Shown piece after piece: positions 8,572 to 49,185 of a stretch of DNA of 64,000 bases. Under the pieces are notes generated by a model. The model worked only from the letters and a program-made list of their open reading frames with translations, was not told where the DNA came from and searched no databases. A program made the translations under genes and the position numbers. Each line of letters starts with the position of its first letter. Position 1 is the stretch's first letter. This stretch comes from Podarcis melisellensis (lineage: Eukaryota), in NCBI GenBank assembly GCA_964234715.1, contig OZ174286.1; one strand, given 5' to 3'.

Positions 8572-9105
8572 GGTTAAACAGTTGCAGGCCCAGTCGCACT
8601 CAGATTAGACTAAGGCAGTGTTTCCCAACCGGTGTTCCGCGGCACACTAGTGTGCCGCGAGACGTTGCCTGGTGTGCCGTGGGAGGGAGGCGGGCGAGTC
8701 GGGCGGCGAGAGGCGGGGCGGCGGCGGCAAGGATCCGCATCGAGCCGGGGGCGGCTCCGCGGTGATGGTGCCGAGGTTTCTCTCTCCATTCTCCCCTCAC
8801 ACACACACACACACACACAGCAAATAACACAGGATCAGCTGACAGGACCCGGCCACAAAAGGGAGGAGCGCGAAACGGCGGCGCAGGGCGGGAGGGCGGC
8901 GCATTGCGCGTGCTCAAACCCGCCCTCCGAGGCGCAGAGGGGAGCTGGGCAAGCGCCTTCTTCAACCACGCGCTCGTTTAAAAGTTTCTCTTTCAAAAAG
9001 GAAACGTGGGTTTCTTCCACCCCATTGGCTGCAACTCCGCCCACTCCGTCCTCCTCCCCCTCGCCCGCCCGCCCGCCCGCGGCGCTTCGCTCCTCAGCCT
9101 CCGCC

Positions 9106-9219
9106 ATGTACCGCTCGCTCCGCCCCCTCCAGCGCCTGAGTTGCGCCAGGGGCGCTGCCGTCCACGCGCGCCAGAGGGGCCCGCCGACCTGCAGCCGCCA
9201 CGCGCAGCCACGGAGGATG
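9106..9219 (+). pseudogene. FH: Captured orphan copy of fumarate hydratase exon 1 (mitochondrial presequence) inside the hAT
   Basis: ccgccATG start; MYRSLRPLQRLSCARGAAVHARQRGPPTCSRHAQPRRM then GTGAGC donor. Recalled human FH is MYRALRLLAR...GAAV...ARM with intron 1 right after that Met. No downstream FH exons seen in the window. Confidence 0.7.
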
Positions 9220-9895
9220 GTGAGCGACGCCCCCCCCGCTGCGCGCGCAATGGAGGGAGGGAGGGAGGCGCAAGGGCGTCAGAGGTGACCTTTGCCGGCC
9301 TCTTGCGGGACAGGCGCCTCCTGCGCGGCTGAGGGGCCCCTTCCCGCCTTTGTGGGCCTGACGCGGCCTCAGGGTTCCCTCCCTCTCTCCACATATATAA
9401 ATTGGCTTTTATTATTAGCGCTTTCGCATTCCTTTTTCTCCCTCCCAGGAGCTCCGGTGGGGGGGGGCGGGCGGGGCTCCCCGCCATTTACCCCCCACAA
9501 CAACCCTGTGAGGGAGGCCGGGCTGAGAGGATTCCAACCCGCGTCCGCCCCCGCTGCTTCCTTCAAGTGGCGTCCTGGGCGAGGACAACATTTGACGGCC
9601 CCTCCCTCAAATATCCCTCATTTTCGCAATAATTCATTTTGGTACAGCTGCTTTTTCCAACGGATCTGTTCAGTGTTGTTATTTGCGCCCCTCTGCCGCC
9701 AGCAGCGTCCCAAATACAGCGCTGCTCCCCTCCTTAGGATGCCAAGCACTCTGAATTGGGAAGTGGCCCCCTTGGGAAGAGGGAGGCTTGCCTCCAAGTA
9801 AAGATGAATATGAAAGTACCTTGTTTTTAAGGGCCTGCGGTGGTGGTGGCTGTTTAACATCCAAGGCTCACAACACAAAACTACATTACATGGGA

Positions 9896-10000
9896 CAGTG
9901 GTACCTCGGGTAACTGAGGCTTCAGGTTACAGACTCCACTAACCCAGAAATATTACCTTGGGTTAAGAACTTTGCTTCAGGATGAGAACAGAAATCGTGC
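9896..10000. mobile_element. Truncated half of the Tc1/mariner MITE, inside the hAT cargo
   Basis: Matches 39706-39810 but stops at gaaatcgtgc; second TIR absent. Confidence 0.85.
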
Positions 10001-10599
10001 TCCAGCATTCAATTTTTTTATAATAATTAAAAAAGTTAACTACAGCTTTGAAACTTCCCAGGAGAGGCCGCCCAGCGCGGGGCTCTCGCCGTCTGCCTGC
10101 CTGGCTGCCTGTGAGCTCGGCGGGCAGCGCCTCCGTCCGCAGCGCCCGCCTCGCGGCTCTCATTCCCTGCCCCTGCCAAAGCTCACCCAGCCAAGCCGCG
10201 CTCTCCTTCCTGCCTCGCTTTGCTGCCTCCTCCCCCCCACCCCCAAAGCTTGGAGGTTCCCCGGCGCCGGCCCGCAGGTTTGACCCCCTTCTCACACCTG
10301 TTCGCGCTCCTTGCACGGAATGGGGCGGATGGGGAGGAACGGGGCTCGCCGCTGCCTCCGCTCGCCCTCCCCCCTCCGCTGGCGGTTCCGCAATTCTTGG
10401 CTTTTTGGCGGTTGGCACAGAAGGAAGGCGGGGGGGGGAATTGAAACTTACACTTTCATGCGTCCCTCCCGGCGTGACGCTGCGCGCTTACGTCACGGGG
10501 CTGTGGTGTGCCTCGAGATTTTTTTCATGAAACAAGTGTGCCTTTGCCCAAAAAAGGTTGGGAAACACTGGACTAAGGATCCAACCCAATGCCCTTTTC

Positions 10600-11040
10600 C
10601 ACCAGCAAGTTGTAAGAATTGCCATGAGGTAGGCAAAACCACCACACCAGCCCAATTTGTCTGCAGGCAAATTCTTCCCTAGCCCCAAATATGGCCACCG
10701 AGTGGAATGGAAGGAGCTTTACCTTCCTTTTCTTCTGGATCAAAGTATCAGGACACCCCAGTAAAGGGGTCCAAGGGGAAGGATTCTGTCTGTATGCCCT
10801 AGAACTTCCCAAATGGCATCCTGGAGGGGTTGCCTGAATTTGATGTGCCTCATATGGGAATCTTTATTTTAGGATTGACCCTGATGAAGTAATCAGCCAG
10901 CAATCTTGCTGTTTGATTCAGGATACGTAGCCAATGCCTACTGACATCTGTAATCAATAAACTTGTGGCCATTTTTGATCCCCAAATGTTGTCATGTCAT
11001 TTACTGCTTCCGGTGCCTCCGCCACAGTGACCTCAGCTGC
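10600..11040. mobile_element. Degraded LTR/DIRS-like repeat fragment
   Basis: ctgtaatcaataaacttgtggcc resembles ctgtaaccaataaggttgtggcc of the 12.6-13.3 kb repeat. Confidence 0.35.
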
Positions 11041-11147
11041 CCACACAAAGGTCGGGTGGGAGCAGACACCCTGTGGCAGCATAGCAGCTATTAAAAAGAG
11101 ATTAATTACCGAAACATATTGATGAGATAACTCACTTTACTATCTTC

Positions 11148-12022
11148 TAGAGCAAGGCAATGTTGGGTTTTCAACATTGTGGTGTATCGCTGGTGTGGGG
11201 AGCAGGGGAGCTACCTTGTCCACCTCCCCACCCCCATGGACCAAGCAGCAGTAGCCAAGTGCACAGAAACTGTCAGGCTCCGTGTGTTTGACTGCCTTCA
11301 CCTTCGCCTGTGCGAGTGTGCTCTTTCCTCCAGTGGGGGGTCGTTTCCCAGGAGGAATGATGCAGCCCACCCTTCCGGGCAAAGTCCGCAAAGCACGGGG
11401 TGCAAACCCAACCTATCCGTGTCTTGCAGACGGGGGCTGCTGGAGGCCCCTACACTGCCTGGCTGCCTTCCACTGGGAGGGTGGGCTCCGTCTTTCTGGG
11501 AGGAAAGGCTCAGCACACCCTCCCAGAGAAGGCAGCCAGGAGGGGTCGGGCTCTCTCCTACTCCCATGCAAGCAGGAGCAGTGTCAAGGCTCTCTCAGCT
11601 GGGGAGGGGGAGCACTTTAATGGAGCCCCCATCCTGCCGCTGGTTTGTGCAAGTCGGTGGTGGGTTGGGGGCTCCGTAAAAGTGCTTGGCTGAGGTGAGG
11701 GCAGCAGCACGCTCCTCAGCCAAACAGTTTAAAGAAGTGGAGGAAGGAACAAGCTGCATTGGCACCTCACAGATTCAGCTTGATTCTCCCCCTGCTGGGG
11801 CAGAGCGCCATGGCGGTTTCACCATATGTATATTGCTGGTGAGATGACCACCGCTTTAGTCCCTCTGCCTCCAGCTCCCGGCTAGTTTGTTTCTCCCTCA
11901 GCACACTGGACACTGGAGGCAGAGGGACTCAAGAGCAGTGATGTTTTCACCAGCGATATACCGCTGAGTGAAGCTGTCATTGCAGTCTGCCCCCACATAT
12001 ACTGATATATCGCCCAGGCCTA
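11148..12022. mobile_element. hAT (Ac-like TAG...CTA termini) non-autonomous element with internal hairpins
   Basis: 8-bp TSD CTATCTTC (11140-11147, 12023-12030); right end tatatcgcccaggccta, degenerate left end tagagcaaggcaat. Confidence 0.75.
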
Positions 12023-12599
12023 CTATCTTCTTGGAGATTCTGCCGTCTCACAACACACGGAAACACTGAATCACAGCTTTCGTTCCAACAGATCTATTGA
12101 CAACTCCTTGGTCTGTAACACTCAACCCACATGAAACGTCAACACAGAGAAGAGCAGCAATTACAGAAAAAGAAAAAAAGGAAACAAGCAGAGAATGGGG
12201 AGTGTATTATTCTTCCAGCGCACTCAGTGCATGAACAGAATAGCAAACTTAAGTGTACAGTTGTATAGTAATTGGCATGTTCAAGTGTCAATCATAAACA
12301 AAAATTGGGCATTTGAACTGCATTGGCATTTATATGAACATAGAAAAACCATTTCATAGTCAGGCTATTTTTTCACCTGGCCCAGCACAATCCCCAACAG
12401 AGATTCTCCAACACTTCTTCCCTGCCCTGTCACCTCACATCCTTTTAGCTGGAGGTTATTTGGCTTGAAGCTAAAGACATTTATTATCAAGCAAAGGAGG
12501 ATTATCTGCTCTTCTGTGCAACGTACCATAATCACTGTTACATATTTTTTCAATTTCATCATGGCACCACCTGTACTGCATGCAAAGCCACTCTCCTTC

Positions 12600-13304
12600 A
12601 CAGGAGGGCGGGCTTGCATGCTGGCCTTGCACTCTCCCACTTAGCGGGGGCATGTCAAGTCCCCCGTGTCACTGGGGAGTCCCGGCCCGCATCACAGCTG
12701 CAGCCAGCCAATCTGGCTGGCTGGGGGGCGTGGTTTGCCGCATTTAAGCAGCCGCACAGCCGGGAACTCTTCCTTCAGCTTCCTGCTCCCGCGGATCTTG
12801 GTTGGTCGCCTGTTGAGGGGGCCTGGTAGGAATTTTTCCACTTGGCAGATTGGCACCAGCCACTTGGTTTTCGCCTACCTCGTAGCTAATCGTCACAACT
12901 TTGTAAGGTTTGGAGGTTAGGCACTGGAAAAGCTTGGTGGACGGGAGGGGAGGTTGTGGCCATCACCTGCCCTTCCCCTTTAAGGGCATTACATTAAAGG
13001 AATCCGGGGGTCGTGGTTCCTGTCCAAAGCCTGGGTAGACACGACCTCTCCAGTGACCCTGAGGGGAGCTCTGAGTTGATGTACATCAACAGGGCTCCCC
13101 CTGCTGGTGGTTAATCCTTGAGAGACTCTCTGCATGGGGTGCAGGAGTCAGATATAGTCTGTTTGGGTCCAATGCCTAAGCCAATACCACTCACATTCTG
13201 TAACCAATAAGGTTGTGGCCTGTATTAGCCCATTAACCTAAAATACTGGTGTCCACGTGTTTTATTCATCAAATGGGGTGGAGGGTGGGCCTTGACGCAC
13301 AACA
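12600..13304 (+). mobile_element. LTR- or DIRS/Ngaro-like terminal repeat
   Basis: CCAAT box, GC box, TATA-like atttaagc, polyA-like aataag; TGTCAAG...CTTGACG inverted ends; boundaries approximate. Confidence 0.5.
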
Positions 13305-13574
13305 GTGAAAGCAAGGTGAGCTGGGGCTTCATTCAAAGAGGGTGGAGCTACAGACAGAACATGGCCACCTCTATCTAAGGAGCTCTTTGGTGATGAATAC
13401 CTGGCAGTCAGGAAGAAATGCTGGCTAAGCAAACACATTTCATGAACTGGCAGACATGTTATTCAATGTTCAGCTGTGCAAGTGAACACATGTCCAGGCA
13501 TCTAGAAGTGAGTGAACAGGATAACAAAAAATGCCAGTTTGTCATTTTGGACTTGTTCACAGGGAGGAACCTAG

Positions 13575-14208
13575 ATACATATCATAAAACTCAACAGAAG
13601 CTAGAGAAACTACCTTTGCGTGTTTTTATTATCATTGAAACGAGTAGATATCTCATCTCACCAATGGCATATTTAACTAATCTTGAAGAAACAAAACAGC
13701 TTTCACCCTGGCTCATTGCAAGGCTCTCCCCTCAGCCATCCAGAAGGTCATTTCAGGAAGACAACCTTATGAGGAGAGAAAATGTCCCTGTGGCTCTGAG
13801 AAACAATTGAACATGGTTTTTTCCCCATTGCCAGTATTATACAAATATACATGCCATGTTCATTCTGCCAATAATACACAAATTTCCAGGACACATAGAC
13901 CAATTCTATATATCTTTATTGCTCCAAGATATAAACCCTGATATAACATATTCAGTCGCCAGATATTGTGCTGCTATGATGGACATACGTCGGAGGAGGG
14001 TATGTACCACACAACTGAAGGTTTACATCTGCTTGACTTAGATGCCTTATGTGTTTTTATCTTATCCTGGTCTATCATAACTGAGAGAATGAGTATGAGT
14101 GCCCCTTACTTTTACAGTTGCCCTCTTGCCTATTTAGCAGCCTCTACTTGTGTTTGTAGGTGCTTTCACCTTATGCTGGCCTATGGGCGTAATAAAGATT
14201 TGACTTGA
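13575..14208 (+). mobile_element. Decayed 3' end of RTE-X-like LINE
   Basis: Frameshifted peptides YLTNLE..AFTLA..ALPSA..RKCPCGSE..HCQYY..LLLQDINPDITYSVARY align by eye with the C-terminus of the 59.5-60.6 kb LINE; AATAAA plus (GACTT)-like tail. Confidence 0.7.
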
Positions 14209-14964
14209 TACCTTTCCATCTAACCTACCTAGCAAGGCTGAGAGGAGTTTAAAATGGAGTAGCCCCACACGTATCACCTTTCCTTTCTTGTTCAGTCTGC
14301 TCCTAATTCATGTGCTGTTGGCAGATGCTCTCCAACTGCCTCCCCACGCCTTCTGCCATATGGCTTTGCATATTTGGAACAGTCTAACCCACTTTCTTTC
14401 ACAAGCCACCCCTCCCACACATCCCTCAAAACCCATTTCTTCTTACAGACTTTCCTGAACTGTCACAACTATCTTTCTCTTTTATGGTGTTGTCAGCTGT
14501 CAGTTAACTTTTCCCTATCCTTAATTCCCTAATTAAGCACACTCAGTGCTTAATTTCAGTTGTAAGGCTTTGTGAATTTAGGTGCTCGATAAATATTCCT
14601 TTCTCAGAGGGCTGCATGTGCGCCTCAGTTCCAAAGAAGGGGATGAGAAATGCAGAATGTGGTATTAGGCTTCCTGAGGAGCTAATTGAAAAACCAAAAT
14701 GTAATTCTCAATTTATTCCTTTCTCTCTTAATCTACCTTGCTCAATGTGGTTTATATCCAAAACATCAGTTACACAGATCCACAGAAATTGGATGGAACC
14801 AAAGGAAGTATTTATCCACATTGACATCACTGATGCTCATGGATAGCTAAAAATGTGACTAACTTCTTCTGGATCCAACTCACATCAAAAACCACAAGTA
14901 AATCACAGTATATAAAAAAAGCTCATAGTATCAAGCAGTACCAAATATCAACATTAAGCACTTG

Positions 14965-15150
14965 AATCCAGTTACAGATAGGTAGCCGTGTTGGTCTGCC
15001 ATAGTCAAAACAAAATAAAAAAATTCCTTCCAGTAGCACCTTAAAGACCAACTAAGTTAGTTCTTGGTATGAGCTTTCGTGTGCATGCACACTTCTTCAG
15101 ATACCAATTCAATTTCGTGTGCATGCACACTTCTTCAGATACCAATACTT
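14965..15150. mobile_element. Penelope-like remnant with internal ~30-bp duplication
   Basis: gtagccgtgttggtctg...ccagtagcaccttaaagacc...ttcgtgtgcatgcacacttcttcagatacc (twice). Confidence 0.6.
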
Positions 15151-15870
15151 GAATCCAATTCATCAGTTCAAGATTTTACCCCCTCTAGTTCCAAGATGAC
15201 TGAAATTGTGTGCTAAAAGCTCAGGGAGGCAGGAAGAGGGCTGGATAAGCTTTCACAGTGGTTGGGGTTGGGACTTTGGTGTTCTCCATGGCTTCCTTCC
15301 CTTCCCCACTATTAAATTAAGCAGAAAGAGCACAAATTGCAAAAAAAAATTTGCAGTATGAAAAATATGCACATTTGCTCAATGCAGGTCACCGATTTAA
15401 GCTTTTCTTAGCAGAGCATTTGGCTTGCCTGGACACAGAATTGTATGCTGTGAAATATGTGAGTGGGTCATAGAGTGGAAACTTAAAACCATTTAATTCC
15501 AATGCAAGCTACATTTTCTCTAACATTATTTTCAAACCAACCCAAATGAGTTTTAACCCATGTACCATGAAAACAAAGAAGCTTGCTTTGATTATGTGTC
15601 TGCTGAGTTACACATGGGGCACTTTAGAGGGACACGTGGGGCAAGGTATTATTACAGAGCAAAGCAGCTTCTTCCAATGTAATGGCTTTTAAACGAGAAC
15701 CTGAATATGAACATGATCTTTTAAAAGGGAATTAAATGGGGAAAGTTAAGTTCTTTAGTCTTTCCCCATCAGTCAAACAATGCACGTGACTAAAACAGTC
15801 TCTCCTCTATCGTAGCTTCCCCACTGTTTGATAGTGTGAAGTTGTAATCTCTTGCTTGTGAAAATCTTAA

Positions 15871-15906
15871 GTTGCCATGGAAACTAACATGGGTTGCCAT
15901 GGAAAT
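15871..15906. promoter_or_regulatory. Tandem RFX X-box-like motifs
   Basis: GTTGCCATGGAAAC (15871-15884) and GTTGCCATGGAAAT (15893-15906); CACGTGAC E-box at 15783. Confidence 0.45.
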
Positions 15907-17386: not shown

Positions 17387-17505
17387 CAGGGCTCACCAGA
17401 ACTCAGTTCTGGCACCTCTGTGGTGGGCGCCATTGCCATGATAAGAGAACGAGGGAGGTGTTCATGGTGAGTTCCGGCACCTATTTTTCTAGAACAATAG
17501 CACTG
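17387..17505. mobile_element. hAT MITE
   Basis: CAG...CTG ends with 8-bp TSD CCCACTAG. Confidence 0.75.
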
Positions 17506-18164
17506 CCCACTAGGATTACCAAAACAAAGAGGATGGAAGACATGGACTGCTGAGGGTGCAGTTATCTGAGACCAGAGATAAAGTCACATGTTGAACACAG
17601 GATGGTTCATATGAGAACACAGGAACTAAAGTAAGAGAATAACTGTAGGAAGGTTCATATGAGATACTGTAAGCAGGACTGTGAAAAAACACAAAGGGAA
17701 GTAGTCAAAAGAGCTGAACAAGTGTAGGGGCGAGGAAGACCCAGGTATGCAGCTCTGTTGGGCATAGATGTATTCTCGTAAAGTCTCAGTAGTGCTGATC
17801 TAATCTCTTGCCCAAGGCCCCAAACCTTCTATGTTTTTGCAATGAAAACCAAGAGAACAAGCTGAGCTACCACTTCACAAGTGACAGACTGAGACATACT
17901 GATAGGAATTCTCCCAAGGACACCAACTCAGTAATGGACTTTGAAAGCAGGCAAGGGTGCAGCTGTCTACTGTGGACCTCTCCTGCTCCCTTTCTGACAA
18001 TACAACAAATACAACTAAAACTTTAAAAAGGGTATGCCTACTCAACTACACTTGCGAAAGATGCAAGGATGGGACACTTTGAGAAGAACAGTGTTCGCCT
18101 TTAAAAAAATGAAAAGAAAAAACTTGACCTTTTTTGCTTATTTGTATAAGTAAAAGCACCATGG

Positions 18165-25414: not shown

Positions 25415-25997
25415 CCGTATTTTTCGCCCTATAGGATGCACTTTTTCCCCTCCAAAAACAAAGGGGAAATCTGTGTCCGTCCTATGGGGCGAATGCAGGC
25501 TTTCGCTGAAGCTTGGAGAGCGAGAGGGGTCAGTGCGCACCGACTCCTCTCGCTCTCCAGGCTTCAGGAAGCTATCAGCAAGCCTGGGGAGCCCGCGGGA
25601 GTTCCCGCAGGGCTCCCTAGGCTGCGGATAGCAGCCTGTTGCACGGAGCGGGGGGTGCGCTGAAGCAGAGCACCCCGCACTTCGGGCAGACATCAGGCAG
25701 CCCCACAAGCTCAGGGGACAGCGGGGAGGCGTAGCGCCGCCATCCCGCTGTTCCCCGACCTGGTTTGGAGGCTGGCGCTGGGGGAGAAGCACACTTCTCC
25801 CCAGCGGTAGCCCCACAAGCTCGGGGGACAGCGGGGAGATGCAGCGCCACCATCCCGCTGTTCCCTGACCTGGTTTGGATTCCCCGACCTGGTTGGGGGG
25901 GGGGGAAATAAAGGAAAAAATGTTTTCCTTTATTTTTCCCAAAAAAAACCTAGGTGTGTCCTATGGACCGGTGTGTCCTATGGGACGAAAAATACGG
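25415..25997. mobile_element. Tc2/pogo-like non-autonomous DNA transposon with GC-rich duplicated interior
   Basis: TIR CCGTATTTTTCG / CGAAAAATACGG; TA TSD; ~70-bp internal unit repeated at ~25700 and ~25810. Confidence 0.85.
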
Positions 25998-37229: not shown

Positions 37230-38000
37230 TGAAGGCCCTTCCAGGCACCCAGATTCCTTTTTTGCTTTACTTGACGGGAGGTCGCACCGCCTTTCCCCTC
37301 CCGCCCCAGTAGAGCTGGCTGCACTTCGCAACACCCAGAAGGCGCCCCGGCACGAGAGAAGCCTGGCCGGAGGGGCACCACAATGGCACCTCCACCACGA
37401 CAAGACCCGGAGACGTGGATGCCCAAAGCCCAGTCCCGGGATGCTGGCCGAGGAGGTGGGAGGGCAGAGGGGCAGCCGCCCGCAGGGAAGAGGGTCGGGC
37501 GGCGCCTTACCTGGAGAAAGCGGGGCTGCGTGCAGAGCATGCTCTTCGGCCGAGGCGGCGGCGGCTCCTCAGTCCCCTCGCGCGCGGCTCCGGGCTCCGC
37601 GCTGCAGTCAGGGCGCGCCGGCCGGCCTTCCTCGGGCTGCCCCTTCGCCTCCGCCCGGGCGCCTCCGCCTCCTCCCTCGCAGCGGCGCTCGAGAGGCAAT
37701 TCCCCGCGTAGGTCCGGGCAGCGGAATACGGCAGCAAAGCGGACGCCTCCGCGGCTCCCCGCCCCGCCCTCTCTGGGTACCAGGCAGGAGCCAGCCAATC
37801 AGGAGCGTCGCCCGCCGGCTCGCTTCGCGCCAGCGGGACGCCCCCCCCCCCGCCGCTCCTCCCCGCGCCCGCGCCCGCCCACGCACGGCGGACGGGACCC
37901 GGTGCTGCAAGGGGAGAGGAGGGCGGGCAGGGCGCAGGCCCTCTCCCCAACGGCCTCCCTCCGCAAAGGGACCCCGAGCACCTCGCGCAACCTCGCCGCC
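37230..38000 (-). promoter_or_regulatory. Native CpG-island promoter of an unidentified minus-strand gene
   Basis: High GC/CpG with no flanking TIR/TSD; CCAAT at 37795-37799, GC boxes at ~37757-37769 and 37840-37880. Confidence 0.8.
37511..37740 (-). other. First exon (5' end approximate); contains ATG at 37540 giving MLCTQPRFLQ (N-terminus or uORF)
   Basis: Strong CAG|GTAAGG donor at 37511/37510 downstream of the CCAAT and GC boxes. Confidence 0.6.
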
Positions 38001-39705
38001 TGTGCTTTTGTTCAGGGCCGTTCATTCATTCATTCATTCATTTTGGTAAATCGTTTTTATTTATTTTAAACAAAAGGGAGGGAACAGTGCGAACCGTACA
38101 GGCGCTGTAAATAATAATACAGTAATAATAATAATACAACAATAACAACAACTTTGGCACAAAGATCAAACGCAGAATTGCATAATAACCAATGCCAGGC
38201 CCTGGTTAGCTTAGAAATAGATGTGGGAGAAATAGCTGGAGGGAGGCGGAGGGAGATGGGGTGAACATGGTATTAAAAGGCAAGACGCAAAGCAAAGGCT
38301 GCGAAGGCACTGACAGGGAGTGTTTCTTACATTTTCAAGAAGTTTAAGTTAGAATTGAAGGGGGAGGAAAACAGATAAGATAGCACTGCATTGGTTTATT
38401 GAATCATCCGTAAACTACAATATGCTGGATGAGCAGCCAAGTTACATGCATCATCATTAACATGTTTAATAAAACAGTACCAGATGAAATAGAATGTTTT
38501 ATTATACCACGCAACAAGATTGGCTCCCACAAGATCTTTCCAAAGCCCTTATGGCTGTAGCAGCAGTCAGTTTGCAGTGAGAAGGTACATCTTTGGTATC
38601 TGAGATGTCAAGTAGGGCCAAGTGAGGAGATGGACCAAGTGTTCAGCCTTTTTAGGGACATTTATGCTGGTGGCAAAAATTAGCTTAGAGCTTGCTTTAT
38701 TTTGTTTTTGTTGCTACAGAGTTGTTTCTGCGGTACTTCCTTTTAAAAGTGACACTCTGGCAACCTGGTTTCTCTCTCAATCACTGGCGTGTGGGGAATC
38801 CCTCCGGTGACTCCACAGTGAGGAAAGGGGCTCTGTCCTTCATCAACTCTTCACATATTTTAGCTGAGTCCAAGCACTGAGAATAGATTTAAGGCCTGAG
38901 CCCTGACATAAATGAAGCCCTGAGTTTGTTCTTCTCCCTTCTCCTTGTAGGTTTACTGTCTGCAGGGTGGGTCCATCCAAAGTTAAGTGGGAGACAGTTA
39001 AGAATTTATAGGGTTTGATTTGGCTGAAGTTAGTTGAAGTTGTGATCCGTTTTAATCAATGTGCTATGTCTGGATCCAACCAATAGACACTGACTTAGGA
39101 TATAATTTCAGGCATCTACTGAAGTGGATACAATTGAAGGATATAATTTCAGGCATCTAGCCGAGGGAAATGTATGTCACAATAAGGCTGCAGTGCTGTG
39201 TACGCTTACCTAGACTTAAGTCCCACTTAGAGTGGGGCTCACGTCTTCGTAGGCTTTTATAGGATTGGACTGTAAGTGTGTCTTTTAGGTGCTACAGGAT
39301 TTTTTATTGTTTTATTGCAGGTGGGATTTAACTTCATATTCCACTTGTAATTAAGGCTTGATGACACACTTTTCTCCAATAAAGCAGCATGGGAAAGGAA
39401 TAGTTGGGAACAAAAAAGCATCAAGGGAAGAATAGACTCACGGTGATTCTTTTCTTGCTCACCACTTCTCTTCTTGAACCTCATTCCCCCCTCCCCCAAA
39501 AATGTCCCACCCCAAGGTGAGAAGCAAATCACCCCTCTTTTATAGCAAAGAAACAGGCTCTTGTCCTTTTATTACACAAGTGTAATAATCTTTCGTTAGA
39601 ATTGAATACATCAGCTGCTTCTAGTTGTATCCAAGACTGTAAACATAAACATGCTTACTCGAGATCTTTGAAATCAGTTGATCTTCTAAGCACATTTGTT
39701 GAGTA

Positions 39706-39920
39706 CAGTGGTACCTCAGGTTACAGATGCTTCAGGTTACAGACTCCGCTAACCCAGAAATAGTACCTCGGGTTAAGAACTTTGCTTCAGGATGAGAACA
39801 GAAATCGTGCGGCGGCAGCGGGAGGCACCATTAGCTAAAGTGGTACCTCAGGTTAAGAACAGTTTCAGGTTAAGAATGGACCTCCAGAATGAATTAAGTT
39901 CTTAACCCGAGGTACCACTG
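39706..39920. mobile_element. Tc1/mariner MITE (family of 627-852, opposite orientation)
   Basis: CAGTGGTACCTC TIRs, TA TSD. Confidence 0.9.
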
Positions 39921-40799
39921 TACTGGAATGGGTGGAAGGGATGTTGGAACTAGTTTTATCTAAGATGGGTTTTTAAAAAAAATCTACAGCACAAATCCAT
40001 CCATATACTGGCATTTCTCTTTGAATAATTTTCACTTTGGATTCATTTATTGTTAAGATAAAGTATCCTCACATATATCTTAAAACTCCTGTGTTAATAG
40101 TTCTTCATGCATAAATGGTTGCTACTGACATATGAAAGATATAGTTCAGTGCATCTAAACATTAACCAACTATCTTCCAGTAAAGAAAATATTCCATACT
40201 TATGTTTTGTCTTCACCCCCCACAGATTTTGCAGTACTGCTGTACCTCATTAAATGGTGTGTCTAGCTTCAATGAATACAAATCTGGTGGAAGATTCCCC
40301 CCCTCCAGTTTTCAGCTCCCCTCCCTGAAGTGGAGCATGGACCTTTCTATTTTCAGATTCACAATGTGGCTTTAAATGCCTTGTATAAAAAGTAAAAGGG
40401 ATGGGTTTTTTAGGTCAAAGATTTCCCAACATTTTGATGAAAATTTGTGTTATGCTTTTTTCTGCCAAAAGGCAGCAGGAAGCTTATAAACATGCCTTAG
40501 TGGATTAAGCTTGCTGCTTTTGCTTGGAAGAAGGAAGAAGGTAGCATAAGAGATGAATCCCTGTTCTATGAAGACCACATGCCTACCCACCATAACATTT
40601 TGCAAGCCATATCAACTATTTCAATACTTTCAATATTTCAATAATTTCAATTTGCTCTTCTTCACGCGCTCTCACACTACATTGGATACACACACATTCA
40701 CCACACACAAACAGACCAGACATCTCTCCCCCCCACACACTTTACATGTCTACAGCCACACATAAATATGTACCTTCTACCTCTCACTCATAAATACAT

Positions 40800-41170
40800 T
40801 CAGTACTTCCTCTCCTCACTCTCTAAGAGGATCTCTTTCTCCCCACCCCACTGATCCTTCTCTCCTTTTCTCTCTCTACCCAGGACCATCTCCTCACCCA
40901 CAGATCCATCTCTATCTCTCTCTCTTTCCATCTCTTGCCTTCTCCCACCACAGCCCTTTCTCTTTATCCAAGAGCATCTCTTTCTCCCACCCTCACAGAT
41001 CCATTTCTCCACCTCACTACCCGGTAGTATATTTTTCTCCCTCTCGTCTCACAGATTTCCCTCTCTCTCTCTATACGCAGGAAACTTTATTTCCCCCAGC
41101 AGAACAGTTCTCTCTCTACCCAGGATAATCTCTCCCCACCACCACACATCCTCCTCGAGCTCTCTTATCT
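40800..41170 (+). repeat. CT-rich low-complexity degenerate tandem repeat
   Basis: Recurrent ctctctacccagga / cacagatcc units. Confidence 0.6.
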
Positions 41171-44100
41171 GTTCAAAGACCTACAACCATGAAGTAACAG
41201 GCTAAGCGATCCCACTGCTTTTTCCTCCTACCCCCAACTTTCAAATAAAAGCTTTCAGGGCCTGTAAAAGGGCCATGAAGGAGTTAGAAAACACACAGAG
41301 AGAAGGGGGGTGGGGTGAAACTCGCAGGACTTTTTAGTACTTTGGAAAGAGTCCCTACCCTTTTTTTTAGAACCTCAGGAAGCAGTGTGCTGACAATATA
41401 GTGCAAATATAGTATAGGCATATATATCAGATAAAATCTCTCCCTCGGTTTTTGCAGGCACAATATCCCCTCTGCTGCCTCCCAAACCCTTTGTTCTTGA
41501 GTTTATAACCTTAAACCTGAAAATCAATACAATGCATACAGTTCAGCAACAGAATTTCCCTCTTTCTTTCCTTGCAGTTTATATTGGTTCTGGACCCCTC
41601 AATTTTAGTAGTGAAAGATGATTTATTAAGTCTCTGGTATTTTACTGTTATAGAGTGGATCACGAGAGATCCCACCAATTTCAGCTCCTTTCTCCCAGTG
41701 TGACTTATGTGATTTTCAGACAGTCAATACTGACTCTCTCCCAGTCCTTTATTTCAGTGCCATTAATTTTCTTCTCCCACACAAAGAGACCTCTCTGAAA
41801 CGGCAGTCTAGGAAGGTCTTGCTACCGCTTTCACAGCTGTACTTTGCTCCCTTGGGAGAATGCACCGCCACTCACCCTCTTTTCTATCCAATTGTGGATG
41901 TTGCTTTCTCCGCAAGATTTTGTCATTTTTGAACAAAAGAAATGCTGGGATCTCCCAATAGAAACAGGAGGGAGTTAAGTTATATGTTGTAAACCAAAGC
42001 TAATTGTCTGCACAAAGGTACGATAGATTTCGCATGTGGACTGGCTCATTCATAAATCAAGTGACCAAATGTAATGGGAGAGGACTGCCACTGGAGACTG
42101 GACTTGCAGTGCATGGAAACCATCTGCTGCAGAAAAAGTGGGTAGTATGTATGTATCTACTTGGTGAAAGAGAAAAGGCCATCCATTTTGTAAAGTCCTG
42201 GCAGGTTTCCTGGACAGGGCCATCTGCAGTCATGTACCAGGATGGGGTGGCAGAGGTGTTTATTCCAGGCAACAGCAAGGGTGCAAGATGGTTATGAAGG
42301 ATCTTATAACACATTGAAAGAACATTGTTGTGTAATGTTTTCTCAGCTCATCGAAAGTGCACTGGAGTAATGTACTCAACATCACACAATTAACCTGGTT
42401 CCCATAATGTGTGTGCTGTAGAAAGAGGTCTGTGCATGTCAGAACAAATGAATAATAATAGGTCCAGCATGCCTACATATTTGTCTGTGGCTGTATCCTA
42501 AGTCCTGTGTCCTGACAGAGCCAGTCCACCAAAGATGTGGGGTGAGGCAGCTGCCTCCTGTGGCATCAAGAAGGAGGGCGAAGAGAAAACCAGAGGGTCA
42601 TGGCATCATATCATTGTAGAGTTAGAAGGGACACCAAGCTGCTTTCTTTGGCAAGATTGTACAGTGATTTTTCTTCCTCCCTTGCCCACCCATGGCCTTG
42701 CTTGCTTGCTCCCCCCCACCCCACCCCCCGCAACCTGCTCCTTACTAAAGGATTCATTAATTACTTTAGTTACGGCACTGTTAGGGGATACTTTGCATCA
42801 TGTTGGGGTCTTTTAGCCCTGCCCCTATCCTTGCATGTACAAGGTTTCAAATTCCTTCATTTTGCTGGTGATAACTGATCCCAATGCCATTTAACAAAAA
42901 CCCTAAAACTTAAAAGGTTGGCTGGGATGAAACCACTCAGAACACTGGTTCTATTTCAGAAGTGGCAGGTTAGATGAGGAAGTTTACCAGATCTTACAAA
43001 CTTCTTTGTGGTCAGCTAAGGCCCCTAACATGTAAAAGGCTTAAATTAAATGATAAACAAAGCTGAAGGAGAAACAAATAAACTTGTGTTATAGAGTGTA
43101 AACAAGTGCATGCGAATAAATTGGAGTGTTTCAAGCAAAGAACTGGGACACAAATTTCACACTTACTGACTGCAGATATTCAGTCAAAACTGTTCAAAGG
43201 TTCAAGTGTCACTCTCTTTGACATGGTACACAGGCAAAATAGATATTCTAAGCACATACCATTGACATTTAGGGTAATAAGCCCATCGAATATTGTCACA
43301 GAGTCTCTTTTTCCTAACTCACCCCCAGGTACCTCAAGTTCAGATGAGAGAATAAATTGTACTTAGTAAACACATTTCTCATATATTCTAGTTAAATATT
43401 TTACTCTGGTTGCAAATTTTGCATTTTATTTTGCAAAGTTTAGACGTTTTTGAATGGCAGGATTAACACAGTTTAAATATGGGCATGTTAGAGATGTTGT
43501 GGAGACACAGTCCATCCCCAAGAGTAGGAAGTATCGTGATGTCGTGGCATTCAGTCCTTGGAGGCTACAGATAAGTATGGAAAGCATATCTGCAACAACA
43601 ATAAGCACTTCTTTCCACATTCAATAAATGCTTATTCCCACATTTCTCATGATGTCACATAGCATTAAACATTTATGAAGACAGAAGGAGGAAATTGAGG
43701 TTATCCAATGCTCAGTAAATTTCTTATGGCACCGAAATGCAAAGAATGGATGAGAAGGACGAAACACTGCATTTATCATGTTGGAAATGAAAATAAAATG
43801 CAGCTTACATATTTTTTGTTTCCCTGAACTGTAAATAATACAATGTGAGGAGCATATATCATCTCCTTGTTTCATTCCACATAGTGTTTGGCTGCATGGG
43901 TGCAGTATCAGAGTGCTAAATTATGACAGCCTGTACCCCATCTTGATCAAATTAATTCCAGCCCCAGGGCTACAGTAATTTGCATAGCCTAGTTTTAAAA
44001 ATGGCTTTCTATGTGAAAATGCACCAGTTTTACATTTCCCTCTCTTGAGTCTCTTTCCCTCCAACTTCCTTTTGTTTCTGAGATGCCTACCTATGCAGTG

Positions 44101-44519
44101 GAGAACGGACAGAGGTTAGCAATTACCATACTTGGCAGCAAGCTCATTTCCATTTGCATAAAATATTAATCTATGTGGGTAAACATGTCCCCATATTTTC
44201 TATCTTAAGCTACTATAGGACCATAGAAAGCTGCTATAAATACAACAACTGCTTTTTATAAACAAGGTTCACTGTAAGTGGGAACAGAGGAGAAATCCAA
44301 GGCGTGTGTCTAAACATTATAATCTGCACCTCAGTTCAAAGGACCTTCTTGACGCCAAAGCACCCACAGCATCCCTGATCAAGCACAGTTCTCCAGGCAC
44401 TTCAAAGGCTGGTGCGGAATCATGTGCTCTTTATGGGTGTAGAACTGCTTCTTCCATTTTTAAAAATGAAAAGCAGCTTTGAGAGGGGAGGATTTACAGC
44501 TGAAAATATTTGCCTTGTT

Positions 44520-45075
44520 TATTTGTTTTGTATACTGGTCTTCAGCCAAAGATCACAGGTGCTTGAGCTTTAGTGGTCAAAAGCAATTTAGGGCTTTATA
44601 GGTCAAAACCAGCAATTTGAATTGGGCAGCCAGTGCAGTCAGGTCAGAATCTGTGTAATATGCTCAAACTGTCTTGCCCCGTGAGAAACCTGGTGGCCAA
44701 ATTCTGCACCAGCTGAAGTTTCCAAGCTGTCTTCAGAGGCAGCCCTAAGTGTAACACATTGCAGTAATCTAACCTAGAGGTTACCAGAGCATAGAGTTAG
44801 GTTATCCTTGCCCTGATGGGGGTGCAGGTGGGACGCCAGCTGAAGCAGATGGAAGGCACTCCTTGCTACTGAGGCCCCTTGAGGCTCAACCAACATCAAA
44901 CGTTTCAGAATCACCCTCAAGTCACATACTAGCTTCTTCAGAGGGAGTGTAACTCCATTATGAGCAGGCCGCCTCCCATCCATCTGGTTTAGGTAATCTA
45001 ACAGTGCCTCAGTCTTATCTGGATTGAGCTTCAGTTTGTTGGCTCTCATCCAGTCCATTACCAAGTACAGCACCT
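44520..45075 (-). mobile_element. L2 LINE fragment
   Basis: Minus ORF WMRANKLKLNPDKTE...VARSAF.LL is typical L2 RT-thumb region. Confidence 0.8.
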
Positions 45076-47156
45076 CCAGACGATGTACTCCAAAATTTTG
45101 GAGAACCCCACCTTCTGGAAGCAACTGCCCAAATAAGACTGGAGCCACTGCAAAATGGTGCCACCCACTCCTAACTCGGACAGCCACTCCAGAAGGATAC
45201 AATGGTCAATGGTAGGGTGGTGTAACGAAGCACCTCTCTTTGGGAAGGGTGTGGCTCAGAGACCAGGGGCAGTGGCGGGGGCTGCCTGGAGGACTCCCAA
45301 GGAGCGGGGAGAGGAGAGAAGGCTGAAGGAACACATCACAAGAAAGGGTGTTTGAAAAGGGGTGAGGGGCTGCCAGATCTGCAGGCAAGGGGTGACATAA
45401 CTGGGCTTCTGAGGCTTGGAGTGTGTTTCCCCACAGGGGAGCTGCAGAAAGAATGTAGTTGGTCAAGGGAGCCATGGACTCAGAAAGGTTGAAAACCTCC
45501 GCATTACACCTTTAATGGAGCTGAAGTCTAATGCTGGAAGTGACAGGGCATGGGTGTGGAATACACATGCTGATTTCACAGAGAAGAAGAAGACTTTTAT
45601 TATTTATACCCTGCCCTTCTGGCTGGGTTTCCTCAACCACTCCAAGAGTCCACTGCATCTGGCAATTTGGTTTTTAAATGCAGAAAATGCACAGAAATAC
45701 AAGCCAGAAAAAGTCCCTCTATCCCTGGTCTAGACCCTCATGGAAAATCTGCCACTTGTAGCCTCCATTGTAGTGACACAATCATCTGCCTTATACCAAA
45801 TCAGACTATGGCTGCATACACACTGTCATTTAAAGCCAGAGGCAGATTTAGAGCAGTGTAACTAGTTTCCCTACCCTGGGCACCGGTAGCCCAGGGTGTT
45901 CTGCATAGTGTCACCCTGATGATGTGGTGAATTGAGCAGAACAGAAGACAAGGAGGGAGGCACACTGAATTTTGGCCTCATACAGGGTGCTGCTGAAATT
46001 TGAAATACCAAAGTCTACCTCTGTTTAAACTACATGATTTCCCTCCAAGAATCCTGGAACCCTAGTTTGTTAAAGGTGCTTGGAATTGTTGCACTGTGGG
46101 AGGGTGGGGAAGTACAGTTGCCAGGATTATGTGGTGGTAGCCATGTGCTTTAAATTTGGGTCTGCACACAGCCTGTCCATCTAGCCCAGTATTGCCTGTT
46201 CTGACTGGCAGTTGCTATCCAGGTTTTCAGACAGAGAAGAGTCTTTCCACAAGATCTCGTCTTATTTTTGACTGTAAATGAATCTTGAACCGACTGTATT
46301 ACTAAGAGCTTTCAGGAGGAGATGCAGACTATGGAACTCTAACAGGCTTGCCCACTTCTTGAACATAACTGGCAGACTTACTCTAAGAATTACTGAAAAT
46401 CTAGGGGGTAATGATCTTGCTTTCAGCCCCTCCATTGGGAACTGCACAAATTACACTGGCGCACAGAGAAGGGGAATAGACATATATGGTCTTTGTAAGC
46501 AATATGCTTTTAGAAATCATGCCAAATAACAGGCACACTGCATTTCCTTGGGTGTTAATGGCCTCTCTGCTGCAGCTCTACAAAAGGCATTGCACGCAGA
46601 TGGTTGTTGGAAGCAATTGTGTTCTGGCTTAGCTAACCAGATGTAAGCTCCTTGAAAGCTATGATCCAGTTTCTGCTCTCCAAAAAAGCAAAGCAGGCGT
46701 TAGCACCTATTGACCTGTTGGAACAGAAAATTCTACATTGTAGGGGACTTGGTCCAAATTCACCAAACTCAAAACTCATGGTGTGATATGATGTAGTGAA
46801 GCTCACACAATATTTGTTGCCATGTAAAAGAGCCCCATTTAACCTTGTGATACAAGACTAGAGCTATTATTTATTTTTGAGCAAGTGCTCAGTAATCAAG
46901 ATGAAGAACTTCAGAAGGAGGTATCAAGGGAGGGTTGGTAAATGTATTACGTAAAGAAAGTAAGAAGAGATTTTAGGTCTTATAAAATACAAAGAAGAAT
47001 AATTATCTAAGAATACAAGGGAAGCCCTCCTAGACCAGAGCAGGTGCTCCATCATCTTTCATCCAACAGTGGACAAATATAGGAAATGCTTGAGCCTATA
47101 TATAGGATACCCTCAAGCAGGGCTTGAAGTTGCCCATCCACATTGTTGGTCCTCAG

Positions 47157-47398
47157 CATGAGCCCTTCCCTCAGTGGTGCCCTGGGCTCATGCAACTTCT
47201 CTGTTGATTGCTTTTATAACAATGTGTAAACAGCAGCATACAAAAGGTTTGCCTGAAAGCTAATGTACTTGCTCAGAAGTGTGAGGGAAGCTGTGACTTA
47301 TTACAGCAGCTCTTGTCAGAATTTATGACTTGTGAATGCTGACCATTCACACATCCCATGCACAGTTGGTGCAATGTAATTTGTTTTCTTCGGTGTAA
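47157..47398 (+). repeat. Arm A of a 242-bp inverted duplication
   Basis: Reverse complement of 50098-50339 with about 6 substitutions counted by eye. Confidence 0.92.
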
Positions 47399-47654
47399 CA
47401 TGGAGGTTTCACTGTTAATAGCTGATGAAAGATCTAGCCTTCATGATTTTGTCTAATTCTCGCTTTAAAACCATTAGACAATGTGACATGTCAGCCTCTG
47501 GTGGCTAAAAGGTGGTGAGATGTTGGTGTGACACATGGCCTGGCCTGCATCTCTTAGATGGCCTGCTGTTCCCAGTGAAAGATCATGTTGAAGTAAGACC
47601 CAATGTCAAGAAATTTAATGTCAGGAGATTTAAAGTATTCTATAGCAATGTAAA

Positions 47655-48019
47655 GCCTTATGATGAACAGCTGAGGGAGTTGAGTATGTTTAGCCTGGAG
47701 AAGACTGAGAGGTGATATACTGCAGTGTTTCCCAACCGGTGTTCCGCGGCACACTAGTGTGCCGCAAGACGTTGCCTGGTGTGCCGTGGGAGGGAGGCGG
47801 GCGAGTCGGGCGGCAAGAGGCCTTAGGCGCCCTGCAGAAAGGCGTCCTCTTTGTGGGTGGGTTCTCCCCCTTCCCTTAGCGCATCGTATTTAGTTGGGGA
47901 TTCTGGAGAGGGGGGCGGGGGCGCGCTGGCCCCGAGCGGAACAGACGCGCCGTCGTCCCCACCTCCCTCTCCTCAGTAGCTCCGAGCCGACTGACTGAGG
48001 GTGGGACGCGGCCAGCGGC

Positions 48020-48075
<56 letters not shown>

Positions 48076-49185
48076 CCTCCCAGCACCGCTTTTCCCGAGG
48101 CAGGCGCGCGCCTAAGGCTGAATGGGAGCAGCCTGGAGGCTTGACGGCCTCTCAGCGGCTCATGACGGGCGTCCCTGAGGCGGGAGGTGCTGAGCAGGGG
48201 CTCTGCGAGAGGGCGCGAGGGATGCGTGGTGGTGCCTGCGCGCGCGTGACTTAAGAGGGCAACCTGCTGCCTCTCCTCTCTCTCCCCTCCCTCCCCTCAT
48301 GGGCACGGAGTCCCCGGCACAGCTTGGCGCTACTACAGCTACAGCTGCTGCTGCTCCTGCTTGGATGAAGGCGGCTGCTTCTTCCTAACGCCCAGCCTCT
48401 GAGGGACCGCAGTCTCCCGCCCTTTTTTTGGGGGGGCGGGATGCTGAGGTAAAGGATCCCCTCGCGCGCGGGCGGGCACCTCTTTGGGCAGGGCGCGTGT
48501 GGAGGCTTAAGGTGGGGAGTGTGGAGGGGTTGCCGCTTGCGAGGGGAGGGTTCATATTGTATTGGGCTGCGGTGTGGGCGACACGGCTCTCCAATGGCCA
48601 GCCCGCGGAGGAACATTGAGTTGGAGCATTTCGAGGAGAGGGACAAAAGGCGCACTGAATAAAGTATTTTATAATTTTTCATATTTCTGTTTACTTACTA
48701 TTTCATAATAAAGTAATTATAAAATACTTTCTTTGTGTTTATTTGATTCCTATTAAAGAGAGTTACTTTATATATAGTCAATATAGGCACAGAGTTAATT
48801 TTTTAAACATTTTCTAATGGTGGTGTGCCTCGAGATTTTTTTCATGAAACAAGTGTGCCTTTGCCCAAAAAAGGTTGGGAAACACTGATATACTGAAATG
48901 GCCATCTTCAAATATCTGAAGACCTGACACATGGAAGATGGAGCAAACTTGTTATTTGCTGCTCCAGAGGGTAGAATCCAAACCAATGGATTCAAATGAC
49001 AGGAAATGAGATTCTGCCTGAACAGTCAGAGCCATTTGACAGTGGAATAGACTAACTCGGAAGGTGGTGGAGTCTCCTTCACTGGAAGTTTTTAAACAGA
49101 GGTTGAATGACCATCTGTCAGAGATTCTTTAGCTGCAAGTCCTGTATTGGGGTCCCTTCCAACAATATGTTTCTATGATTTGAGA
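47655..49185 (+). mobile_element. CR1 3' fragment split by the hAT insertion at 47723-48887
   Basis: PYDEQLRELSMFSLEK before the insertion; ggccatcttcaaatatctgaag...gtcccttccaac...ctatgatt after it. Confidence 0.8.
47723..48887. mobile_element. Non-autonomous hAT transposon carrying different CpG-island cargo (Pack-TIR-like), copy 2
   Basis: Same 15-bp TIRs as copy 1; 8-bp TSD ATATACTG (47715-47722, 48888-48895); GC-rich interior 47822-~48620; AT-rich 48650-48887 probably native hAT end. Confidence 0.92.

What the first reader, a model, noticed from the sequence alone, without database searches (positions are those of the whole stretch)
8616..48887. A hAT family that appears to capture and move CpG-island promoters/first exons: two copies with the same ends and unrelated cargo
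Seen: 8616-10570 (1955 bp) and 47723-48887 (1165 bp) share a 99-bp left end (2 differences, both CpG G>A), an identical 68-bp right end and perfect 15-bp TIRs. Each has its own perfect 8-bp TSD (GACTAAGG; ATATACTG), so each transposed as a unit. Their interiors are non-homologous, yet both are CpG-rich with GC boxes, CCAAT or CRE motifs and splice donors. Established: 8-bp TSDs mark hAT elements; gene-fragment capture is known from plant Pack-MULEs (biased to GC-rich 5' ends) and has been reported as uncommon Pack-TIRs in animals. Inference: two different loaded copies within 40 kb suggest a large, young promoter-shuffling family in this lizard lineage.
Basis: partly seen in the sequence, partly recalled or inferred. 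Interest (0 to 1): 0.9.

Follow-up and report, generated by a model that had tools for sequence, protein, structure and literature searches.

The report
Cargo-carrying hAT transposons in a lizard
Two young cut-and-paste (hAT) transposons with identical ends carry unrelated promoter-like, CpG-rich DNA, and one belongs to a cargo-bearing subfamily of roughly 7-50 copies in three related lizards; the kind is known but rare at this copy number in vertebrates, and the host source genes were not found here.

Summary
Two elements (8616-10570 and 47723-48887) share perfect 15-bp inverted ends, a 99-bp left end and a 68-bp right end. Each has its own perfect 8-bp target duplication. Their interiors are unrelated and CpG-island-like.

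Public contigs show the shared ends are present in thousands of copies. Copy 1's cargo is not a one-off capture at this site. It occurs at roughly 10, 30-50 and 7 copies in three related species, with structural variants that point to stepwise, modular assembly.

The cargo looks like ordinary genomic DNA: an ATG exon with a splice donor, a MITE cut in half, and a short stretch that is a few-hundred-copy repeat. No donor locus could be shown. The proposed FH (fumarate hydratase gene) origin could not be tested. No spliced or elevated transcription was seen. Empty sites were not resolved. Copy 2's cargo could not be tested at all.

This scan has already noted the same kind of element many times elsewhere in this genome (UBE2G1, AHSA1, DCLK2, SIX5, ATP6V0A2 cargoes and others). 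The kind (Pack-TIR) was published for animals in 2021, where multicopy cases were only 4 of 370.

The parts
8608..8615 (.). Left target-site duplication of copy 1 (GACTAAGG); repeated at 10571-10578
   Evidence: Read directly
8616..8714 (+). Copy 1 family left end. It holds the 15-bp TIR (8616-8630), a 21-nt palindrome (8639-8659), three GTGTGCC heptamers and a GC-rich inner part ending in GAGAGGC.
   Evidence: Summed contig depth about 5e5 against about 60 for single copy in run X1.
8715..9105 (+). Cargo A, promoter-like CpG island. The piece 8776-8855, with a (CA)n run, is replaced by 17 other letters in a contig of another species.
   Evidence: CpG o/e 0.90 and GC boxes. Joint 8775>8856 in X13.
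9106..9219 (+). Cargo A exon-like ORF of 38 codons (MYRSLRPLQRL...PRRM), followed by GTGAGC at 9220. It is the putative first exon; FH origin is proposed but untested.
   Evidence: The protein searches were uninformative.
9220..9894 (+). Cargo A intron-like tail. CpG o/e falls to 0.57. A short stretch within 9494-9614 is a few-hundred-copy repeat.
   Evidence: the depth bin 9494-9614
9895..10003 (+). Half of a ~230-bp MITE. It starts at the MITE's own terminus and is cut mid-element. Four fuller copies lie elsewhere in the window.
10004..10061 (+). AT-rich linker between the cut MITE and cargo B
   Evidence: Read directly
10062..10502 (-). Cargo B, a second CpG-rich module. It begins with GAGAGGC, the same 7 bases that end the shared left end. 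It holds a CRE at 10488-10495 and, on the minus strand, ATGAAAGT|GTAAGT at 10459-10446. Its copy number is higher than that of cargo A.
   Evidence: Contig depths are 25-176 times single copy, and a deletion variant 10111>10484 is present.
10503..10570 (+). Copy 1 family right end (TIR 10556-10570, two GTGTGCC heptamers)
47715..47722 (.). Left target-site duplication of copy 2 (ATATACTG); repeated at 48888-48895
   Evidence: Read directly
47723..47821 (+). Copy 2 family left end. It has two CpG>CpA changes relative to copy 1.
47822..48640 (+). Copy 2 GC-rich cargo. It holds a (CT)n run, 4 of copy 2's 5 GC boxes, CCAAT motifs and ATGCTGAG|GTAAAG at 48441-48454. Its origin and copy number were not tested.
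   Evidence: No protein hit.
48641..48819 (+). AT-rich stretch next to the right end, probably native family sequence rather than cargo
   Evidence: The last 30 bases reappear, with one difference, as the loose end in front of 10503 in contigs of species C (table 7)
48820..48887 (+). Copy 2 family right end, identical to that of copy 1

Best explanation
Both elements are transposase-less members of one very abundant hAT family. All they keep of the family is the cis-acting ends: the 15-bp TIR plus subterminal GTGTGCC repeats.

Their middles have been replaced by blocks of ordinary genomic, CpG-island-like DNA. These are Pack-TIR-type cargo carriers.

The cargo was most likely copied in by microhomology-mediated template switching. 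This would happen during repair of an excision gap or at a stalled fork, starting from the GC-rich inner part of the left end. This step is inferred. The loaded element was then moved and multiplied in trans by an autonomous hAT transposase encoded elsewhere. Multiplication is shown; the transposase was not found.

Copy 1 carries two stacked modules. It is one copy of a subfamily already amplified to roughly 7-50 copies in three related species, so the capture happened elsewhere and earlier, not at this site.

Nothing here shows that the carried promoter-like DNA is active.
For: - Two independent perfect 8-bp TSDs, and perfect TIRs starting CAGTG.
- 10 of the 18 GTGTGCC heptamers in the window lie in the 334 bp of shared ends; none of 100 shuffles reached 18.
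- The ends have a summed contig depth of about 5e5, against about 60 for single-copy contigs in run X1. The ratios are similar in X5 and X13.
- Cargo A contigs have 568-598 depth against 46-107 for flank contigs in X1. The figures are 200-358 against 6.5-7.6 in X5, and 126-152 against 15-24 in X13. Cargo B is higher in all three.
- Signs that the cargo is genomic DNA rather than family sequence: a MITE cut in half, a short high-copy stretch within 9494-9614, an ATG exon plus donor, and CpG o/e of 0.7-0.9 against 0.07-0.3 in the flanks.
- Modularity: the 7-bp direct repeat GAGAGGC brackets cargo A, the MITE and the linker (8708-8714 and 10062-10068). Contigs in all three species join about 8726-8729 directly to 10060. 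Cargo B is 2-4 times more abundant than cargo A.
Against: - No donor locus was seen. No contig was shown carrying the cargo beyond its breakpoints without hAT ends.
- ORFs from the cargoes and the 38-codon exon found no relatives.
- The one RNA-like contig set shows only an unspliced contig across the putative donor, at low depth.
- Copy numbers come from per-contig k-mer depth, which the tool warns is rough.
- The joints to 10060 rest on short sides of 19-26 letters, with unknown letters in between.
- No autonomous partner lies in the window.
Confidence: 0.62

Rival explanations
1. The interiors are intrinsic, subfamily-specific internal sequences of ordinary non-autonomous hAT consensus elements. 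They could be remnants of different autonomous elements' own CpG-rich 5' regions. On this view they are not host DNA, and there was no capture.
For: Copy 1's interior is fixed and multicopy in three species. The native inner part of the left end is itself GC/CpG-rich, with o/e 1.06. No donor and no protein relatives were found.
Against: The interior contains a half MITE cut at a module boundary, and a fragment of another dispersed repeat. The two interiors share nothing. Modules occur in different combinations. There is no transposase-like ORF or Pfam signal. Earlier, unverified notes of this scan name host genes for other copies in this genome.
Confidence: 0.22
2. The cargoes are captured and also functional. 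They would be mobile promoters or first exons that start transcripts and splice into host genes where they land, as the title 'promoter-shuffling' implies.
For: Promoter motifs, ATG exons and donors are intact, and CpG content is preserved.
Against: In the RNA-like contig set X15 the only contig over the donor (9193-9948) is unspliced and at depth 15. There is none over 9010-9190. Cargo depth is low for about 30-50 genomic copies. Copy 2's ends show CpG>CpA decay, as expected for methylated DNA. Youth alone explains the preserved CpG.
Confidence: 0.1
3. The near-identity of the cargo between species reflects recent exchange of the element between species, by introgression or horizontal transfer, rather than shared ancestry of the subfamily. 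The cargo differs by 0.3-0.6%, against 2-3.6% for the unique flanks.
For: In X5 the cargo contigs show 3 substitutions in 891 bases, while the flank contig shows 18 in 506. In X13 the figures are 7 in 1143 against 15 in 766.
Against: Contigs of a multicopy family approximate its consensus, which changes more slowly than single loci. Promoter and exon DNA may also be constrained. No hAT end was found in viral or metagenome contigs.
Confidence: 0.15

Closest known systems
Animal Pack-TIRs, especially the multicopy Pack-hAT-N8_XT of the western clawed frog (Tan et al. 2021, PMC8277862)
   Same: A non-autonomous hAT carries a 5' gene fragment between intact TIRs. Each copy has its own TSD, showing transposition after capture. 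A template-switching origin has been proposed (FoSTeST).
   Different: In that survey of 100 genomes only 4 of 370 Pack-TIRs were multicopy, and the frog example had three copies. Most arose without transposition, by gap filling in old TEs. Here one family end-set carries at least three different modules. Copy number is roughly 7-170 depending on module and species. The modules are stacked. The parental locus, which that paper's examples have, has not been shown here.
Bat Helitrons carrying gene 5' ends (HelibatN3/NUBPL; Thomas et al. 2014, PMC4224331)
   Same: This is a vertebrate DNA transposon family that preferentially carries promoter, 5'UTR, first exon and part of intron 1. It amplifies them and stacks captures sequentially.
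   Different: Helitrons are rolling-circle elements that capture by read-through of their ends, and they lack TIRs and TSDs. Here the elements are cut-and-paste hAT with 8-bp TSDs, and copy numbers are far lower than the thousands seen in bats.
Plant Pack-MULEs
   Same: TIR elements with captured, GC-rich gene fragments biased to 5' ends, often as mosaics of several genes and in many copies (general knowledge; copy figures quoted in PMC8277862 and PMC4224331).
   Different: They belong to a different superfamily (Mutator, with long TIRs and 9-11-bp TSDs) and to plants. Their donors are documented genome-wide.
hAT-Charlie-type MITEs of amniotes (MER5A/MER20-like)
   Same: Short non-autonomous hAT elements whose ends begin CAGTG..TC.CAACC, as recalled from memory. 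They have 8-bp TSDs and thousands of copies.
   Different: Those are ancient, with fixed TE-derived interiors. The resemblance of the ends was not tested here against a repeat library.

Membership tests
hAT superfamily (non-autonomous member) | 8-bp target-site duplication | tested here: met
   Two independent perfect 8-bp TSDs
hAT superfamily (non-autonomous member) | Short TIRs beginning YARNG | tested here: met
   Perfect 15-bp TIR CAGTGTTTCCCAACC on both elements
hAT superfamily (non-autonomous member) | Mobilised by a transposase with BED/RNase-H/hAT dimerisation domains that shares these ends | not testable with these tools
   The window has no transposase ORF. No lizard genome could be searched.
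hAT superfamily (non-autonomous member) | Subterminal short repeats (transposase binding sites) | tested here: met
   Five GTGTGCC heptamers per element lie within the shared ends; none of 100 shuffles reached the window's total of 18. Binding itself was not tested.
Pack-TIR (gene-fragment-carrying TIR element) | Intact family termini with TSD enclosing non-family DNA | tested here: met
   The depth drop at 8714/8715 and at 10502/10503 separates the thousands-copy ends from the tens-copy interior.
Pack-TIR (gene-fragment-carrying TIR element) | A parental host locus elsewhere that holds the cargo without the TIRs | tested here: inconclusive
   No such contig appears among those shown. Protein searches were blank or spurious. 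The genome itself was not searchable.
Pack-TIR (gene-fragment-carrying TIR element) | Cargo includes genic sequence (exon/UTR/promoter) | tested here: inconclusive
   There is an exon-like ATG ORF with a donor, and CpG-island statistics. Gene identity is unconfirmed and no spliced RNA was seen.
Multicopy (transposition-dependent) Pack-TIR | The same cargo at several loci | tested here: met
   Per-contig depth of cargo A is 7-50 times single copy in three species, and cargo B is 25-176 times. This is a rough measure, and individual loci and their TSDs were not seen.

The most novel reading that the evidence does not exclude
One still-active hAT family of wall lizards repeatedly and preferentially picks up CpG-island promoters with first exons. 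It stacks them stepwise and spreads each load to tens of copies. The bias would arise because the GC-rich inner part of the element's left end primes microhomology-mediated template switching into open, GC-rich promoter DNA. This would be an animal cut-and-paste counterpart of plant Pack-MULEs and bat Helitrons, on a scale the 100-genome survey did not see.
Probability: 0.35. Interest if true: 0.75.

Novelty: new member of a known kind. Interest (0 to 1): 0.5.

Why it matters
Capture of gene fragments by cut-and-paste transposons is a major source of new gene structures in plants. In animals it was reported as rare, mostly single-copy and mostly independent of transposition.

Here one set of hAT ends carries several different promoter-like loads, and at least one load is amplified to tens of copies in three species. 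A family like this would give a vertebrate system in which two things can be studied while the elements are still young:
- the capture mechanism, through microhomology at the breakpoints and stepwise stacking of modules;
- the consequences, such as dispersed CpG islands, ectopic first exons and new splice donors in introns.

The value lies in the family-wide picture, which this scan has now met repeatedly in this genome. These two copies alone do not carry it.

Tried and rejected
- **Cargo ORF searches.** I searched the 90%-cluster protein collection with 8632-9285 (+) and 48254-48682 (-), hoping to reach other copies or donor loci. There were no hits, so contigs could not be fetched by that route.
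- **Exon search.** phmmer of the 38-codon exon against 1.84 billion representatives gave one hit at E 5e-6. It is a 932-aa internally repetitive protein with incoherent Pfam matches, aligned at 35-40% over 20 residues in each repeat. I judged it spurious. The FH assignment therefore rests only on a recalled resemblance (MYR-LR-L start...RM before a phase-0 donor) and is untested.
- **Collection scans.** Exact scans for the 23-base left terminus in metagenome and viral contigs found nothing.
- **Scan's own notes by sequence.** Look-ups with the left end and with copy 2's cargo were blank.
- **Paralogous empty site.** I looked for one inside the window for either insertion. No other repeat copy spans the junctions.
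- **Orthologous empty site.** It was not resolved. Contig 30 of X5 starts exactly at 10571 with two unaligned letters, which is compatible with an empty site but far too little to claim.
- **Context searches.** Pfam on the eight long ORFs outside the CpG islands found nothing, so the host gene and any transposase remain unidentified. Rfam found nothing inside the elements above threshold.
- **Third CpG island.** I considered that the island at 37251-38100 might be a third loaded element. I rejected this, because it has no TIRs and looks like a genuine host promoter.
Full report
**1.

Copy 1 is at 8616-10570 and copy 2 at 47723-48887. Both begin with CAGTGTTTCCCAACC and end with its reverse complement. 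This 15-mer occurs exactly four times in the window, only at these four ends.

Copy 1 is flanked by GACTAAGG on both sides, and copy 2 by ATATACTG.

The left ends align over 99 bases with two differences, both CG in copy 1 and CA in copy 2. The right ends are identical over 68 bases. Nothing else is shared. blastn with 9-base words finds no similarity between the interiors, or between the interiors and the rest of the window. The exceptions are a MITE fragment and microsatellites.

The interiors stand out by composition:
- CpG observed/expected is 0.90, 0.86 and 0.69 for the three GC-rich blocks.
- The flanks score 0.07-0.30.
- GC boxes number 16 and 5 in the two copies, against 0.12 per kb in the rest of the window.

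The only other CpG island in the window, at 37251-38100, has no inverted ends. It looks like a real host promoter with a first exon on the minus strand.

**2. Anatomy**

The shared ends hold more than the TIR. There is a 21-base palindrome at 8639-8659. Each element has five copies of the heptamer GTGTGCC. Ten of the 18 occurrences in the whole window lie in these 334 bases, and none of 100 shuffles reached 18. Subterminal short repeats of this kind are what hAT transposases bind in studied elements (established knowledge). The two copies therefore seem to keep just the cis-acting parts.

Copy 1's interior is a mosaic:

| Coordinates | Content |
|---|---|
| 8715-9105 | promoter-like island |
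| 9106-9219 | ATG-initiated ORF of 38 codons, ending at GTGAGC |
| 9220-9894 | intron-like tail with falling CpG content |
| 9895-10003 | half of a ~230-bp MITE, starting at the MITE's own terminus and cut mid-element |
| 10004-10061 | AT-rich linker |
| 10062-10502 | second CpG-rich block, with a CRE and, on the minus strand, ATGAAAGT followed by GTAAGT |

The seven bases GAGAGGC end the shared left end (8708-8714). The same seven bases open the second block (10062-10068), so they bracket the whole first module.

Copy 2 has 819 bases of GC-rich DNA, then 179 AT-rich bases. The last 30 of those AT-rich bases reappear in front of the family's right end in contigs of another species (table 7). 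That stretch is therefore probably native family sequence rather than cargo.

**3. Evidence from public runs**

Runs of three coded organisms hold the region. I laid one DNA run of each, plus one small RNA-like contig set, on 7800-11400.

X1 (organism A) matches the unique flanks with no differences, so it is the window's species.

Per-contig depths, used as a rough guide to copy number:

| Run | Unique flank contigs | Cargo A contigs | Approx. copies of cargo A | Cargo B contigs |
|---|---|---|---|---|
| X1 | 46-107 | 568-598 | ~10 | 1584 |
| X5 | 6.5-7.6 | 200-358 | ~30-50 | 488-1200 |
| X13 | 15-24 | 126-152 | ~7 | 458 |

The bins that hold the family ends reach about 5e5 in X1. X5 and X13 give similar ratios, which means thousands of copies. 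The tool warns that depth is a poor measure, so I use only ratios of per-contig depth within one run and treat them as rough.

So the family is large. Copy 1's cargo is the fixed interior of a subfamily present in all three species, not a capture made at this site.

Structural variants are visible:
- Contigs in all three species join about 8726-8729 to 10060, a form without the first module. The short sides are only 19-26 letters and the letters between are unknown.
- A deletion 10111>10484 lies inside cargo B.
- In one species 8776-8855 is replaced by 17 other letters.
- Contigs of all three species carry an extra 8 bases at 9871.

Cargo B is more abundant than cargo A, and the GAGAGGC repeat brackets the first module. 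Together with the variants, this fits stepwise assembly: a cargo-B element first, then the first module copied in by microhomology. The reverse, a microhomology-mediated deletion, is not excluded.

**4. Is the cargo host DNA?**

For:
- It contains pieces of other dispersed repeats, cut at module boundaries: the half MITE, and a stretch within 9494-9614 with a summed depth a few hundred times single copy.
- It has an exon-like ORF with a splice donor.
- It has CpG-island statistics.
- Its modules combine differently in different copies.

Against, or missing:
- No contig shown carries the cargo beyond its breakpoints without the hAT ends.
- The two cargo ORFs found no relatives.
- The 38-codon exon found only a spurious repetitive protein among 1.84 billion representatives.

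From memory, human FH exon 1 also starts MYR-LR-L and ends ...RM before a phase-0 donor. That is a lead and not a test, and I could not obtain a lizard FH sequence with these tools.

I put host origin at about 0.6, and an intrinsic, subfamily-specific interior at about 0.2.

**5. Activity**

The RNA-like set X15 has one contig over 9193-9948 that runs unspliced through the putative donor at depth 15. It has nothing over 9010-9190, and only 27-35 elsewhere on the cargo. The unique flanks have 0-11.

For an element with tens of genomic copies this is background. X15 is only guessed to be RNA. There is no evidence that the carried promoters fire or that the donors are used. The two CpG>CpA changes in copy 2's end are what methylated DNA would show.

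**6. Age and spread**

Several features indicate very recent insertion:
- The shared ends differ at 2 of 167 bases.
- The TSDs and TIRs are perfect.
- Copy 1 is identical to the multicopy contigs of its own species over 600 bases.

Between species the cargo contigs differ by about 0.3-0.6% from the window, while the unique flanks differ by about 2-3.6%. A family consensus changes slowly, and promoter DNA may be constrained. I therefore read this as a shared, recently active subfamily. Exchange between species cannot be excluded.

Whether either insertion is absent at the orthologous site of the other species was not resolved.

**7. Comparison with what is known**

Tan et al. 2021 (PMC8277862) found 370 Pack-TIRs in 100 animal genomes, 208 of them hAT. 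Only four were multicopy (three in a frog, one in an alligator). Most arose by transposition-independent gap filling. [quoted passage not shown]

Thomas et al. 2014 (PMC4224331) showed that bat Helitrons preferentially carry promoters, 5'UTRs, first exons and first introns, and amplify them.

No paper in the searchable library describes such hAT elements in lizards.

The present elements are hAT by the tested criteria: TSD length, TIR form and subterminal repeats. They work like multicopy Pack-TIRs. Formal membership needs the parental locus, which I could not show.

**8. Earlier notes of this scan**

Searches show that the same kind of element has been reported many times elsewhere in this genome. 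Cargoes attributed to UBE2G1, AHSA1, DCLK2, SIX5, ATP6V0A2, a transglutaminase and others were noted, several judged multicopy by other follow-ups. I did not check those claims. They are leads that raise my prior for a family-wide phenomenon, and they make this instance less new for the scan.

**9. Verdict**

- Shown: one large, young hAT family; two copies with the same ends and unrelated CpG-island-like interiors; and, for copy 1, a modular cargo amplified to tens of copies in three species.
- Inferred: host origin of the cargo, capture by template switching, and a bias towards promoters.
- Not supported: promoter activity.

This is a new member of a known kind. The genome-wide study set out under next steps could raise it to a new variant, an animal cut-and-paste analogue of Pack-MULEs.

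Noticed in passing
window 47157-47398 and 50098-50339: A pair of 242-nt inverted repeats, 98% complementary, encloses 2.7 kb that includes the whole of copy 2. No obvious TSD was seen. It may be a long-TIR element or a local inverted duplication into which copy 2 later inserted.
   Followed up: partly
window 8430-8577: A palindromic MITE (65-nt arms, 89% complementary) lies 38 bp upstream of copy 1. It matches the Rfam miRNA family mir-5408 on both strands below the gathering score (49.5 against 90 bits). By contig depth it is present in tens of thousands of copies.
   Followed up: partly
window 625-854, 39705-39928, 55546-55768, 59243-59466: Four fuller copies of the ~230-bp MITE with ends TACAGTGGTACCTCGGGTTA, 81-93% alike. 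Half of one such copy sits inside copy 1's cargo.
   Followed up: partly
window 37251-38100: The only CpG island in the window that is not inside a hAT element (GC 0.69, o/e 0.91). It looks like a real host promoter. On the minus strand ATGCTCTGCACGCAGCCCCGCTTTCTCCAG is followed by GTAAGG near 37508. The gene was not identified.
   Followed up: no
window 47640-47722 and 48888-49130: Copy 2 is inserted into a common reptile interspersed repeat (…GGTGGAGTCTCCTTCACTGGAAGTTTTTAAACAGAGGTTG…). A second, 79%-similar copy of that repeat lies at 51273-51333.
   Followed up: partly
window 25696-25879: Two tandem 74-nt units spaced 110 bp apart, 91% identical, in a moderately GC-rich stretch. Unexplained.
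   Followed up: no
window 9033-9229 (tables 3-4): Contigs of species B and C share three substitutions and an 8-bp deletion relative to the window copy in the promoter/exon part of cargo A. The two substitutions inside the 38-codon ORF (9156 and 9204) are both synonymous. That is too few to infer constraint.
   Followed up: no
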